Of a stretch of DNA of 64,000 nt, positions 44,101 to 46,915 are shown in pieces. The position numbers and the translations under genes were made by a program. Positions within the stretch are counted from its first letter, which is position 1, and every line of letters begins with the position of its first letter. The notes beneath the pieces were generated by a model, which saw only the letters and a program-made list of their open reading frames with translations, did no database searches and was not told the DNA's origin. Source of the stretch: Salpingoeca rosetta (lineage: Eukaryota > Protista > Choanoflagellata); assembly GCA_033442325.1 (NCBI GenBank), contig JAWQFM010000001.1, positions 133,014 to 197,013 on the forward strand, given 5' to 3'.

Positions 44101-46915
44101 TCGTGTTGCCCCTCGTGTGCAGAATTTCTTTGGACCAAACAACTCCCACTGCATGTGTGAAACGTGCGAGCGGTGAGTTTCGTTTGAAACGCAATGCTTG
44201 ATTGACGATATCACACTTGTGTTGTTGACGTCCCACGTGCTGTGATCACACACACATACTCGCCACCTTACATGTATTCACCCATGCAAACACACACACA
44301 CACACACACACACACACGCACGCACACACACACACACACACACACACACACACACACACACACACACAAACAAACACACGTACACAAACCCATACCCACT
44401 CCGTCGCACAATTTGTAGGCTTGGGCGCGGGGCGTTTGCTACGAATCCGGGAGCACTGGACGCCGTGCGGTTGAAGCAGCCGACGCCGAGAGTACTGCAG
44501 ACTGCCCCCGCATCCATCCCACCCGTGAGTACCATACCCAAGCCATGCGTCCACTGCCCATCGTGTGTGTGCATGTGTGTGTGTATGTGTGTGGGGAAAA
44601 GCAGCCGTGCCAGCCTTGCACTGGGTCCCGCACGTCATGTGTGGCTGTAATTGGTGGTTTGCCCGCATCTGTTGTCACACCCTATCCATGCTCACACGCA
44701 CACGCACGCGCGCACGCATGCATGCATGGATGGATGTTGGTTGACAGGAGGTGTGCCTGTCCATTCCCCGCTACATGGCCGTGTTCGTGCGCCTTGAGGA
44801 CTCCATCGACAAGTTCTGGGCGCCAGCCCTGGTGAGGTGTCCGGGCCAGCTTTGGCTGCTTGTTGTTGTTGTGTGTGTGTGTGTGTGTGTGTGTGTGTGT
44901 GTGTGTGTGTGTGTGTGTGTGTGTGTGTGTGAGTGAGTGAGTGTTGTGGTTTTGTATGTTGTGTGTGTGTGTGTGTGTGTGTGTTGTGTTGTGTTTTTGT
45001 ATGTTGTGTTGTGTGGTGAATGCGCACGCCTGTTCGTGTGAATACTGCACGCATGCACACACAGACACAGACACAACCACAGTACAGACACAACCAAGCG
45101 TGGACACTCACATTCGCGTTCCCCCGCTTGCTTGCCCTGCTGCGCTGCTCCCGTGCAGTTGGTGCCGCGTGATGAGCGGGACGAGCGCATGCCATCGTGT
45201 GCAACCGACACAGAGGTCGTCCGCTACTTTCGCGACGCGGCCTTGTACGTGCCTCTCTCTCACCCAGCTGATGCGTGCATGTGTTACAGTCGGCTGTTGC
45301 TAGCTCCGCTGCTCTGTTCTGCTGTCCAGTTTTTGAGCTTGTGATCGTTGTTGCTGGTGGTTGGTTGACGAGGCTGTGCTCTGTTGCAACTTGTGTGCTT
45401 TTCACGTTGGCGTTGTTCTCTCATACGCGACACCATCTTACCACCCATCCCATCAACCAACCATCCCACCAGCGGCACGGCGCCCGTTGCACGCATGTTT
45501 CCGTTTGTCGTCGACGCCGCCCCGTACTCAAACTTCTCCACCGCCCTCGTGCGTATCCGCCTGCCCTGTGCCAGGCGCAGACAGGAAGATTGTGTGTGCG
45601 TGCGTGTGTGTGTGTGTGTGTGTGTGTGTGTGTGTGTGTGTGTGTGTGTGTGTGTGTGTGTGTGTGTGTGTGTGTGTGTATGTGTGTGTATGTGTGTGTG
45701 TGTGTATGTGTGTGTGTGTGTGTGTGTGTGTGCGAGAGGAGCCATGATACGGCAGCCACGACGTGTTTGCTCCGTCACCATCTTGTTTCTCATGTATCAC
45801 ATCACCATTTGTTCAGGGCCCCATGTTTCTGATGGATCCAGCTGTTCGCGCAGCAACAAAATTCGCAACAACAGGCGTTCTGGACGAGGTGCGTGTCAAC
45901 GTTGTGTGTCTGTGTCTGTGTATGACACCAATGACGCTTGTTGTCCTTCTTTCTCGGGTTGGAGTCACCCCATACTGCACTCACGTGCTCGTCACGTGGT
46001 TGTTTGCGTTGCCAGCGCATGCGGTGGAGCAAGATGCAGCTGCCGGTGACCGCAAACAACACATCCGCCACAAAGATGGGAAAGGGCACGTCCAACGCAC
46101 TGCACAAGGCGAGTGTTGGTGAGCTGTCGCTGACAACGGGCAGGCACGCGCTGACGAATCACCGCATCATGGTGCTTGGTGAGCCGCCAATCCGGGCGCC
46201 ATGCATTGGGCGCGTCGACGACGAGCGCGTGTTCGTCTCCATTGCGCAGCGCCGCCAACGCCTCCCCTGCCTCACCATCACATGGGACGCGCAGGTATGC
46301 CCGTGGGGCCTTGTGTGTGTGTGTGTGTGTGTGTGTGTGTGTGTGTGTGTGTGTGTGTGTGTGTGTGTGTGTGTGTGCGTGTGTGTGTGTGTGTGTGTGC
46401 GTGTGTGTGTGTGTGCGTGTGTGTGTGTGTGTGTGTGTGTGCGTGTGTGTGTGTATGTGTGGTCTGGTGTATTCGATGTCTCTTCTCCGCCGCATGCCCC
46501 ATCCTTCGTGCTCCCAATTCCTCACAACACCCCCCTCCTCTACCTCCAATGCATCCCAGCTTGCCCTGAACCGAAAGCATCCAGTTGCAACGACCAGCAG
46601 GTGTGGAATCACATGTGCAATGCGCCTCTGTTTTATATTGGTGTATGTACATGCCATCACTCATATGAACAACGACAATTCCCCATTGCCCAGACACACA
46701 CGCACACACACATGCGCGTGTGCGATGCCGCCGCGCATTTCCCTCACACATTGACACATACACACATACACACATACACACACACATATGCAACGAAGCG
46801 CTGCCTTGAGCGCCACGGACGATTCTGCTTCGAACGCGAAAACAAGGGCATCACAGTCGCGTCGCACCAGTCGCAGCAGCAGCAGAGCAAGCACTGGCGG
46901 CACTGGCACTGGTGA
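41162..46915 (+). CDS. SUV420H: Histone H4K20 methyltransferase SUV4-20 (KMT5B/C, Set9)-like, with a C-terminal PWWP-like domain; start may extend to the ATG at 40918
   Basis: [23 protein letters not shown]; [116 protein letters not shown]. Later exons give [20 protein letters not shown]. Linkage of the 3' exons is less certain. Confidence 0.88.
43296..43885 (+). repeat. Exact 285-bp tandem duplication (43296-43580 = 43601-43885) containing the SET-domain exon
   Basis: The two copies read identically by eye, and the ORF track shows identical peptides offset by 305 bp. They are separated by a 20-nt unique spacer. Confidence 0.95.

What the first reader, a model, noticed from the sequence alone, without database searches (positions are those of the whole stretch)
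44748..45888. SUV4-20 methyltransferase apparently fused to a PWWP/RBB1NT-like reader domain
Seen: after the post-SET zinc site, same-strand spliceable exons encode [35 protein letters not shown]-..[14 protein letters not shown]..[17 protein letters not shown]. This is a W-x-PAL strand, a VxYF strand and a terminal helix, as in PWWP/RBB1NT folds. Established: animal SUV420H1/2 have no PWWP domain, whereas fission-yeast Set9 needs the separate PWWP protein Pdp1, an H4K20me reader, for chromatin binding and higher methylation. Inference: this may be a read-write fusion placing both functions in one polypeptide in a close relative of animals.
Basis: partly seen in the sequence, partly recalled or inferred. 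Interest (0 to 1): 0.72.

Follow-up and report, generated by a model that had tools for sequence, protein, structure and literature searches.

The report
SUV4-20 methyltransferase with built-in PWWP domain
In this choanoflagellate the only SUV4-20 (histone H4 lysine-20) methyltransferase gene carries, after its catalytic domain, four short exons encoding a PWWP-type chromatin-binding domain; other choanoflagellates and filastereans share this layout and the sampled animals lack it, but the domain's methyl-lysine pocket is incomplete here.

Summary
Exons at 44748-44831, 45159-45244, 45473-45548 and 45817-45888 have AG/GT borders. They stay in one open frame with the upstream SUV4-20 exons (N-domain, SET, post-SET) and with at least one downstream exon.

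These four exons tile, in order, a roughly 105-residue domain that follows the SET domain in SUV4-20 proteins of Helgoeca nana, Bicosta minor, Pigoraptor chileana and Capsaspora owczarzaki. Two genomic contigs from related organisms show the same exons downstream of a SET exon. In three of those four orthologues the domain passes Pfam's PWWP and/or RBB1NT cut-offs; Helgoeca falls just short.

An AlphaFold model of the Helgoeca domain has pLDDT 81. Its best PDB matches are the ARID4A PWWP/RBB1NT domain (Z 10.6 and 9.7), then other PWWP domains.

None of about 230 other SUV4-20 proteins of 400 residues or more that I fetched has the domain. Every one whose source name was seen is an animal KMT5B. 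The gene is single-copy in this genome.

So the fusion is real. It probably dates to the common ancestor of choanoflagellates and filastereans and was lost in animals. Reading of methyl-lysine is not shown. By alignment, this protein keeps one of three cage aromatics plus the cage aspartate, with Ala at the central Trp position.

I obtained no RNA data for this genome. I found no paper describing the architecture. I rate it a new variant of a known kind, of moderate interest.

The parts
41162..42627 (+). Exon 1. The frame is open from 41015 and the first in-frame ATG is at 41162; the true start was not determined. It encodes a long low-complexity N-terminus and the SUV4-20 N-domain (about 41771-41974, LGFQTHKM motif).
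   Evidence: tblastn of the Helgoeca, Bicosta and Capsaspora proteins onto 41480-42037 gives E 2e-21, 4e-15 and 9e-7.
42855..42959 (+). Exon 2, the start of the SET region.
   Evidence: AG/GT borders, in frame. Matches orthologues and L001 at 61% identity.
43300..43570 (+). Exon 3, the SET catalytic core (NHDC motif). An exact second copy lies at 43605-43875, inside a 285-bp tandem duplication (43296-43580 = 43601-43885).
   Evidence: Pfam SET 7e-8. 1303 SUV4-20-type hits in the representative library. Duplication shown.
44123..44172 (+). Exon 4, the post-SET cysteine cluster (CxCxxC).
   Evidence: 72-81% identical to Pigoraptor, L001 and L002.
44419..44524 (+). Exon 5, a poorly conserved linker.
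   Evidence: AG/GT borders, in frame. No family hit.
44748..44831 (+). Exon 6. PWWP strand beta-1 (VFV) and the motif KFWAPAL, which corresponds to the P-W-W-P motif.
   Evidence: Aligns to orthologue domains. Profile hit. 70% identical to L002 and 48% to L001.
45159..45244 (+). Exon 7. End of beta-2, the insertion loop (MP motif) and beta-3 (VVRYFRD, holding the cage-position Tyr and Asp).
   Evidence: Best profile hit in the window, E 2.3e-4. Also.
45473..45548 (+). Exon 8. Beta-4 and beta-5 and the start of the helical part; the most variable piece.
   Evidence: Aligns collinearly. 52% identical to L002, E 2e-7. Not found by the four-orthologue profile.
45817..45888 (+). Exon 9, the C-terminal helix of the PWWP fold ([11 protein letters not shown]...TG.L).
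   Evidence: 54% identical to Helgoeca. Profile hit 0.018. tblastn to the Helgoeca protein P0263 at 52% identity.
46016..46294 (+). Exon 10. Its first residues (RMRW) finish the PWWP tail, where a Trp is conserved. The rest is of unknown fold.
   Evidence: In frame. No Pfam hit. No significant match to the second domain of the acanthoecid proteins. AlphaFold on the single sequence gives pLDDT 37.
46560..46600 (+). Tentative exon 11 (41 nt), which keeps the frame between E10 and the last exon.
   Evidence: AG/GT borders and phase bookkeeping only. Not otherwise supported.
46799..47066 (+). Last exon with the stop codon. The C-terminal motif RPVEGDPLFC is conserved in a related genome.
   Evidence: tblastn to L002 3057-3344 gives E 1.4e-5.

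Best explanation
Exons E6-E9 (44748-45888), together with the first residues of E10, encode a PWWP-fold Royal-family domain of the RBB1NT (ARID4-like) subtype. It belongs to the same polypeptide as the N-domain, SET and post-SET modules of this genome's single SUV4-20/KMT5 gene.

The architecture is shared by choanoflagellates (this genome, Helgoeca, Bicosta and two environmental or SRA contigs) and by filastereans (Capsaspora, Pigoraptor). All animal KMT5B proteins seen here lack it. It is therefore most simply read as ancestral to choanoflagellates, filastereans and animals, and lost on the animal stem.

Inferred mechanism: the domain is a cis-acting chromatin anchor that holds the enzyme on nucleosomes. 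In fission yeast the separate PWWP protein Pdp1 does that job for Set9.

Shown: the gene structure, the homology, the fold and the distribution. Inferred: chromatin binding. Doubtful for this species: recognition of methyl-lysine. The central cage Trp is Ala here and in the closest relative L002, and only one of three canonical cage aromatics remains, although the cage Asp is invariant across the family.
For: Gene structure:
- One open frame across 10 exons, all AG/GT.
- The SET exon and this domain profile each match only this locus in the 55.4-Mb genome.

Homology:
- The window exons tile the orthologue domain collinearly.
- A profile built without window rows picks E7, E9 and E6 as its three best hits in the window.
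- Genomic contigs L001 and L002 show the same exon order downstream of a SET exon. There is an intron after the PAL/PAV motif in this window, L001 and L002, and apparently in P0003.
- Helgoeca proteins P0152 and P0263 are labelled complete ORFs from a transcriptome assembly and contain N-domain, SET and this domain on one chain.

Fold and family:
- Pfam on orthologue domains: PWWP 28.1-29.8 bits (cut-off 25.6) and RBB1NT 28.6-29.2 bits (cut-off 25).
- PDB profile search: DNMT3B PWWP 1e-6, ARID4A RBB1NT 0.0047, Pdp1 PWWP 0.018.
- AlphaFold model: pLDDT 81, five strands plus helices.
- Foldseek top hit 2yrv at 2e-4. VIA-align Z 10.6 and 9.7 to ARID4A, and all 50 listed rows are PWWP domains. Nearest ESM Atlas clusters are RBB1NT/ARID4, TM 0.67.

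Distribution:
- Of 263 SUV4-20 proteins fetched, only the five choanoflagellate or filasterean proteins and one partial one carry the domain. The 116 hits listed after the four query-like proteins in the profile search cover only N-domain plus SET; those with a source name are animal KMT5B, and a few unnamed assembly-derived proteins could not be placed.
Against: - The single-transcript claim rests on frame continuity and on orthologues.
- Pfam's own PWWP and RBB1NT models do not detect the window's short exons. The family assignment is transitive, through orthologues.
- The fold was predicted for the Helgoeca orthologue, not for the window protein.
- The cage is incomplete: Lys, Ala, Tyr plus Asp.
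- The domain is not basic (K+R 13 against D+E 14; orthologue pI 4.6-4.9, except Capsaspora at 8.7). A classical DNA-binding PWWP face is therefore not evident.
- Ichthyosporeans, fungi, ctenophores and placozoans were not examined, so 'ancestral and lost in animals' is a parsimony inference from limited sampling.
Confidence: 0.75

Rival explanations
1. A true read-write module. The PWWP domain recognises methylated H4K20 (for example H4K20me1, as Pdp1 does) and so feeds the adjacent SET domain its substrate or spreads the mark.
For: The Pdp1 PWWP is among the PDB profile hits (E 0.018). Pdp1 binds H4K20me1 and recruits Set9 (PMC3119473; PMC10553808). The cage Asp is invariant and the beta-3 aromatic is present in 7 of 8 family members. 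Bicosta, Pigoraptor, Capsaspora and L001 also keep Trp or Tyr at the central cage position.
Against: In the window protein and in L002 the central cage residue is Ala, and in Helgoeca it is Leu. The first cage position is non-aromatic in every member. The closest structural relative is the ARID4A PWWP/RBB1NT domain. In the papers read here, methyl-histone binding of ARID4A is assigned to its chromobarrel domain, and the PWWP function is described as unreported (PMC8038949; bioRxiv 10.1101/257527). No binding data exist for this domain.
Confidence: 0.2
2. The domain has the PWWP fold but has lost chromatin reading. It would serve as a protein-protein interaction or purely structural module, for example docking a partner or regulating the SET domain.
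For: The cage is degenerate in three of eight members. The domain has an acidic or neutral net charge. Its nearest relative, the RBB1NT subtype, has no demonstrated methyl-lysine ligand in the papers read.
Against: The barrel core, the FxD motif and the C-terminal helix are strongly conserved across choanoflagellates and filastereans, with the same position next to a histone-modifying enzyme. Most PWWP domains bind chromatin (PMC3119473).
Confidence: 0.15
3. The PWWP-like exons belong to a separate downstream gene or are not expressed with the SET exons, so the fusion is an artefact of reading exons together.
For: There are no transcript data for this genome. The assembly shows an exact tandem duplication of the SET exon just upstream, so local assembly quality could be questioned.
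Against: The introns between exons E4 and E10 are only 127-327 nt, and the frame is unbroken across all exons. Conservation extends upstream of the only Met in E6; L001 has no Met there. The same order is found on single proteins in four other species and on two other genomic contigs.
Confidence: 0.03

Closest known systems
Fission-yeast Set9 (KMT5) with its partner Pdp1, a PWWP protein
   Same: An SUV4-20-family H4K20 methyltransferase is coupled to a PWWP domain. The Pdp1 PWWP is a profile hit of this domain family. According to PMC3119473, Pdp1 binds H4K20me1 and recruits Set9.
   Different: In yeast there are two proteins and the coupling is in trans. Here there is one polypeptide. Pdp1 is reported in the literature to read H4K20me1 through its PWWP domain, whereas the window domain has Ala at the central cage position. 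Whether the two PWWP domains are orthologous is not resolved.
ARID4A/ARID4B (RBBP1) PWWP domain, Pfam RBB1NT PF08169
   Same: It is the best structural match (Z 10.6 and 9.7; Foldseek 2e-4; Atlas TM 0.67) and a Pfam RBB1NT hit in the orthologues. They share the W-[YWAL]-P-A-L and V-R-x-F-x-D motifs.
   Different: ARID4 proteins have no SET domain; their PWWP sits between a double Tudor and an ARID domain. Sequence identity is only about 19-24%.
Animal KMT5B/KMT5C (SUV420H1/H2)
   Same: The N-domain, SET and post-SET modules are orthologous, with about 60-67% identity over the SET exon.
   Different: No PWWP-like domain was found in any animal member examined, including a sponge and a cnidarian.
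Capsaspora owczarzaki CAOG_02948 (XP_004363787), Pigoraptor chileana EP01137_P011701, Helgoeca nana EP00037_P029372/4, Bicosta minor EP00729_P020639
   Same: The same architecture, with the domain at the same place. The window exons align collinearly.
   Different: These are predicted, unstudied proteins. Capsaspora has a long insert between SET and PWWP. The two acanthoecid proteins (Helgoeca, Bicosta) carry a further conserved C-terminal domain that was not detected in the window.
NSD/ASH1-type H3K36 methyltransferases and DNMT3A/B, which carry PWWP domains in cis
   Same: A writer enzyme and a PWWP domain sit on one chain. The DNMT3B PWWP is the top PDB sequence hit.
   Different: They belong to different catalytic families and act on a different mark or on DNA. 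Their PWWP domains have complete aromatic cages.

Membership tests
SUV4-20 / KMT5B-C histone H4K20 methyltransferases | SET domain of the SUV4-20 type, with KMT5B/C proteins as nearest relatives | tested here: met
   Pfam SET 7e-8 on exon 3. There are 1303 hits and the best full-length ones are 60-67% identical. Named relatives are KMT5B/SUV420H1.
SUV4-20 / KMT5B-C histone H4K20 methyltransferases | Conserved helical N-domain upstream of SET (LGFQTHKM region) | tested here: met
   tblastn of Helgoeca, Bicosta, Capsaspora and Pigoraptor proteins onto 41771-41974 gives E 2e-21 to 5e-7.
SUV4-20 / KMT5B-C histone H4K20 methyltransferases | Post-SET cysteine cluster | tested here: met
   Exon 4 encodes a CxCxxC cluster that is 72-81% identical to relatives.
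SUV4-20 / KMT5B-C histone H4K20 methyltransferases | Methylation of H4K20me1 to me2/me3 | not testable with these tools
   Needs an enzyme assay.
PWWP domain (Pfam PF00855) / RBB1NT (PF08169) | Score above Pfam's gathering cut-off | tested here: inconclusive
   The window exons searched one at a time (24-28 aa each) give no hit. The Pfam models do not find the locus in the raw genome. Orthologue domains do pass: Bicosta PWWP 28.1; Pigoraptor PWWP 29.8 and RBB1NT 28.6; Capsaspora 29.2 for both. Helgoeca RBB1NT scores 22.7, below the cut-off. The joined window domain was not searched.
PWWP domain (Pfam PF00855) / RBB1NT (PF08169) | Five-stranded beta-barrel with an insertion between beta-2 and beta-3 and a C-terminal helical bundle (PMC3119473) | tested here: met
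   Met for the Helgoeca orthologue, modelled with an alignment that includes the window exons. pLDDT 81; strands at 11-14, 26-31, 47-52, 58-62 and 66-68; helices across 76-102. All of the top 35 Foldseek rows and all 50 VIA-align rows are PWWP domains. For the window protein this is by alignment only.
PWWP domain (Pfam PF00855) / RBB1NT (PF08169) | P-W-W-P motif at the start of beta-2 | tested here: met
   A variant form is present: F-W-A-P in the window, F-W-W-P in Bicosta and Pigoraptor, W-W-Y-P in Capsaspora, and W-Y-P in ARID4A. The first Trp and the Pro-Ala are invariant.
PWWP domain (Pfam PF00855) / RBB1NT (PF08169) | Cage of three aromatic residues for methyl-lysine (for example HDGF2 Y18, W21, F44; PMC3119473) | tested here: not met
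   By alignment to DNMT3B and Pdp1 the window has Lys, Ala and Tyr, plus the conserved Asp. The family as a whole has at most 2 of 3. No coordinates were available to check for substitute residues.
Set9-Pdp1-type coupling of an H4K20 writer to an H4K20me reader | Physical coupling of a PWWP domain to the SUV4-20 enzyme | tested here: met
   They are covalently linked in one open reading frame and in orthologous proteins.
Set9-Pdp1-type coupling of an H4K20 writer to an H4K20me reader | The PWWP domain binds methylated H4K20 | not testable with these tools
   Needs binding assays. The incomplete cage argues for caution.

The most novel reading that the evidence does not exclude
The last common ancestor of animals, choanoflagellates and filastereans made H4K20me2/3 with a self-targeting enzyme, in which a SUV4-20 catalytic module was fused to a PWWP reader of methylated H4K20 or of the H4 tail. 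Animals lost the built-in reader at their origin and handed targeting to separate factors. On this reading the fusion would be a 'Rosetta stone' showing that the yeast Set9-Pdp1 partnership reflects an ancient, general writer-reader logic for H4K20.
Probability: 0.2. Interest if true: 0.7.

Novelty: new variant of a known kind. Interest (0 to 1): 0.5.

Why it matters
SUV4-20 enzymes set H4K20me2/3, marks tied to heterochromatin, replication and DNA repair. How the enzymes are targeted differs between yeast (the Pdp1 PWWP protein) and animals.

A covalent SUV4-20-PWWP protein in the closest unicellular relatives of animals links the two known situations. It predicts a functional writer-anchor coupling that can be tested in organisms that can be cultured and manipulated. 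It also marks a domain loss on the animal stem.

In addition, it gives a corrected gene model. A multi-exon gene with very short exons and repeat-rich introns is the kind of locus that automatic annotation may truncate.

I found no paper describing this architecture in four full-text searches. The precomputed Pfam annotation of the Capsaspora protein does already list SET, PWWP and RBB1NT.

Tried and rejected
- Joined model. The spliced protein has no reference and was not sent to any search, family or fold tool. Exons were searched one at a time by reference. The conceptual splice was made only inside scripts, to check phases and stops.
- Pfam on single exons gives only SET on E3 and nothing on E6-E10. 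The exons are too short.
- A word-index search with the N-domain region of exon 1 found nothing. The same search with the Pigoraptor domain region found only the query itself.
- The genome's own annotated protein was not returned by any library.
- Pfam PWWP and RBB1NT models against the raw genome do not detect this locus.
- Second domain. The conserved C-terminal domain of Helgoeca and Bicosta (E 3e-15 between them) was sought in exon 10 and in the rest of the window, and nothing significant was found. AlphaFold of exon 10 alone gave pLDDT 37, which is unusable.
- The ESM Atlas feature search with Pigoraptor SET+PWWP scored below 0.9 and gave no SUV4-20 cluster, so it says nothing about outgroups.
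- The 'separate downstream gene' reading was rejected on frame continuity, short introns and orthologue collinearity.
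Full report
**What is in the sequence**

The + strand from about 41.0 to 47.1 kb carries a multi-exon eukaryotic gene whose introns are full of (GT)n and (CA)n runs. I fixed the exon borders by anchoring on the coding stretches. I then checked that every exon has an AG acceptor and a GT donor.

The ten exons are 41015-42627, 42855-42959, 43300-43570, 44123-44172, 44419-44524, 44748-44831, 45159-45244, 45473-45548, 45817-45888 and 46016-46294. They add up to 2742 nt in one frame with no stop. 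The finding's coordinates are exactly exons 6 to 9, and all four quoted peptides are there.

A 41-nt exon (46560-46600) and a last exon (46799-47066) keep the frame to a stop codon. The 41-nt exon is tentative. The last exon is supported by a conserved C-terminal motif in a related genome.

**The upstream part is SUV4-20**

- Exon 3 hits Pfam SET.
- In a library of 1.84 billion representatives it finds 1303 relatives, the best full-length ones 60-67% identical. Where names are available these are KMT5B/SUV420H1.
- Exon 1 holds the family's N-domain.
- Exon 4 holds the post-SET cysteine cluster.
- In the 55.4-Mb genome the SET exon matches strongly only at this locus, so the gene is single-copy.

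**Limits on how I could search**

The spliced protein has no reference. I therefore did not send the joined model to any search, family or fold tool. Exons were searched one by one, and the splice was made only inside scripts to check phases.

Taken singly, exons 6-9 (24-28 residues) give no Pfam hit. No library returned this genome's own annotated protein.

**Orthologues carry the same extra domain**

A local tblastn of the 150 best SUV4-20 representatives against the window showed two proteins reaching into exon 7. These are Pigoraptor chileana EP01137_P011701 and Capsaspora owczarzaki CAOG_02948. Both hit Pfam PWWP and RBB1NT just after the SET domain.

A profile search then added Bicosta minor and two Helgoeca nana proteins. 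The Helgoeca proteins are labelled complete ORFs of a transcriptome assembly.

Aligned with these, the four window exons tile the domain end to end without overlap. They are 36, 36, 28 and 54% identical to Helgoeca. The splice junctions fall on conserved residues: PAL|LVP, as in Bicosta; a split codon giving Phe where the others have Tyr or Phe; and a conserved Gly and Trp at the next two junctions.

**Independent test against chance**

I built a profile from the four orthologue domains only and ran it over all six-frame ORF pieces of the window. It returned E7 (2.3e-4), E9 (0.018) and E6 (0.13) as its three best hits. All are on the + strand and in profile order. The next best hit had E 16.

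The same profile finds the same exons downstream of a SET exon on two other genomic contigs. L001 is a JGI metagenome contig and L002 is an SRA-derived contig.

Exon by exon, the window is 72, 75, 70, 46, 52 and 45% identical to L002 for E3, E4, E6, E7, E8 and E9. There is an intron after the PAL/PAV motif in the window, L001 and L002, and apparently in the metagenomic fragment P0003. These are conserved coding exons linked to the SET exons in several species.

**The fold**

- Cut out alone, the orthologue domains pass Pfam's cut-offs. Bicosta scores PWWP 28.1. Pigoraptor scores PWWP 29.8 and RBB1NT 28.6. Capsaspora scores 29.2 for both. Helgoeca RBB1NT scores 22.7, just below the cut-off.
- A profile of the family against all PDB sequences finds DNMT3B PWWP (1e-6 for a duplicated construct, 0.03 for single chains), ARID4A RBB1NT (0.0047) and the fission-yeast Pdp1 PWWP (0.018).
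- AlphaFold on the Helgoeca domain, using that alignment, gives mean pLDDT 81 with five strands followed by helices. This is the layout described for PWWP domains in PMC3119473.
- Foldseek ranks the RBB1NT domain of RBBP1 first (2e-4, TM 0.57/0.60), followed almost only by PWWP domains.
- VIA-align gives Z 10.6 (ARID4A PWWP-ARID, 110 residues, 3.3 Å) and Z 9.7 (RBB1NT). All 50 listed entries are PWWP domains.
- The nearest ESM Atlas clusters are RBB1NT/ARID4, TM 0.67 and 0.66.

**Distribution**

Of 263 SUV4-20-family proteins fetched, the family profile finds the domain only in the Helgoeca (two), Bicosta, Pigoraptor and Capsaspora proteins and in one partial metagenomic protein.

The 116 hits listed after these in the profile search cover only the N-domain and SET (39-47% of the query) and carry Pfam SET only. 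Those with a source name are animal KMT5B and include a sponge, a cnidarian, echinoderms, arthropods and chordates. A few are unnamed assembly-derived proteins that could not be placed.

With presence in both choanoflagellates and filastereans, and a single-copy gene here, the simplest reading is an ancestral fusion lost on the animal stem. Ichthyosporeans, fungi, ctenophores and placozoans were not examined, so the age of the fusion and the point of loss are inferences.

**Function**

PWWP domains that read methyl-lysine use three aromatic residues, for example HDGF2 Y18, W21 and F44 (PMC3119473). From my own recall of DNMT3A/B structures, an acidic residue three places after the third aromatic also contributes.

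In the HMMER alignments to DNMT3B and Pdp1, the invariant Trp of this family matches the first Trp of the W-W-P motif. The residue before Pro matches the cage Trp.

| Cage position | State across the family |
|---|---|
| Central cage position (residue before Pro) | Trp in Bicosta, Pigoraptor and L001; Tyr in Capsaspora; Leu in Helgoeca; Ala in the window and L002 |
| Beta-3 cage position | Tyr or Phe in seven of eight members (Tyr in the window); Ser in Helgoeca, as in ARID4A |
| First cage position | non-aromatic in every member |
| Asp of the F-x-D motif | invariant |

The window protein therefore keeps one of three canonical aromatics plus the Asp. A conserved Phe or Trp one place from the canonical first position might substitute, but I had no coordinates to test that.

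The domain is also not basic. The window has K+R 13 against D+E 14, and orthologue pI is 4.6-4.9 except Capsaspora at 8.7. A classical DNA-binding surface is not obvious.

The papers I could read describe no methyl-histone binding by the closest structural relative, the ARID4A PWWP. They assign weak H4K20me3 binding to ARID4A's chromobarrel domain instead (PMC8038949; bioRxiv 10.1101/257527).

My best reading is a cis-acting chromatin anchor that does in one chain what Pdp1 does for Set9 in trans (PMC3119473; PMC10553808). Methyl-lysine reading is plausible in some family members but doubtful in this species.

**Comparison and novelty**

The parts are known families. The combination is not described in any paper I could find in four full-text searches.

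- A survey of PWWP genes lists four PWWP proteins in Monosiga brevicollis. Two are an NSD-type and a Peregrin-type protein and two carry PWWP as their only recognised domain, so no SUV4-20 architecture is reported (PMC3457860).
- A broad reconstruction of chromatin evolution places the origin of KMT5B/C in Opisthokonta and does not mention a PWWP form (bioRxiv 10.1101/2021.11.30.470311).
- Automatic Pfam annotation of the Capsaspora protein already lists SET, PWWP and RBB1NT, so the raw information sits unremarked in databases.

I class it as a new variant of a known kind and of moderate interest. It would be more interesting if binding assays showed a real H4K20 read-write coupling.

Noticed in passing
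window 43296-43885: There is an exact 285-bp tandem duplication holding the whole SET core exon (43296-43580 = 43601-43885), with a 20-bp spacer. Including both copies would shift the frame, because the exon is 271 nt, and the gap between the copies is only 34 nt. Either copy alone gives the same protein. It could be real or an assembly artefact. It is also noted by the scan as s1-440710.
   Followed up: partly
window 42640-46450 (introns of the gene): Almost every intron of this gene holds long (GT)n, (CA)n or (GTGC)n runs. Translated, they produce spurious Cys/Val-rich ORFs that give false tblastn matches.
   Followed up: no
P0152:612-735 and P0115:452-580 (Helgoeca, Bicosta): The acanthoecid SUV4-20 proteins carry a further conserved C-terminal domain after the PWWP (36% identity, E 3e-15, no Pfam hit). 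It has a strand-rich pattern suggestive of another small barrel. It was not detectable in the window, L001 or L002.
   Followed up: partly
window 46016-46294 (exon 10): This 93-residue exon is in frame with the gene, but has no family hit and no match in L002, and its single-sequence AlphaFold model is at pLDDT 37. Only its first residues (RMRW) align with the tail of the PWWP domain. The rest is unexplained.
   Followed up: partly
window 46980-47066 and L002 3057-3344: The extreme C-terminus (motif RPVEGDPLFC) is conserved between this gene and the SRA-derived relative (E 1.4e-5). It is a short conserved tail of unknown role.
   Followed up: no
L001 1396-1751 and 2401-2559: In the metagenomic relative the SET core exon is split by an extra intron, and the equivalents of exons 7 and 8 are one exon. 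Intron positions in this gene therefore vary among related species, while the intron after the PAL/PAV motif is kept.
   Followed up: no
P0152 versus P0263 (Helgoeca nana): The two transcript-derived isoforms are identical up to residue 744 and then diverge. The P0152 tail is Cys/Val/Ala-rich, as if read through a repeat-rich intron or UTR.
   Followed up: no
G000:C3:2276182-2276997, C1:2814997-2817577, C12:142448, C10:1087822: Other PWWP-like exon matches (Pfam PF00855, below the cut-off exon by exon) occur elsewhere in this genome. They are presumably the NSD, BRPF and other PWWP genes. There is no RBB1NT hit anywhere in the raw genome.
   Followed up: no
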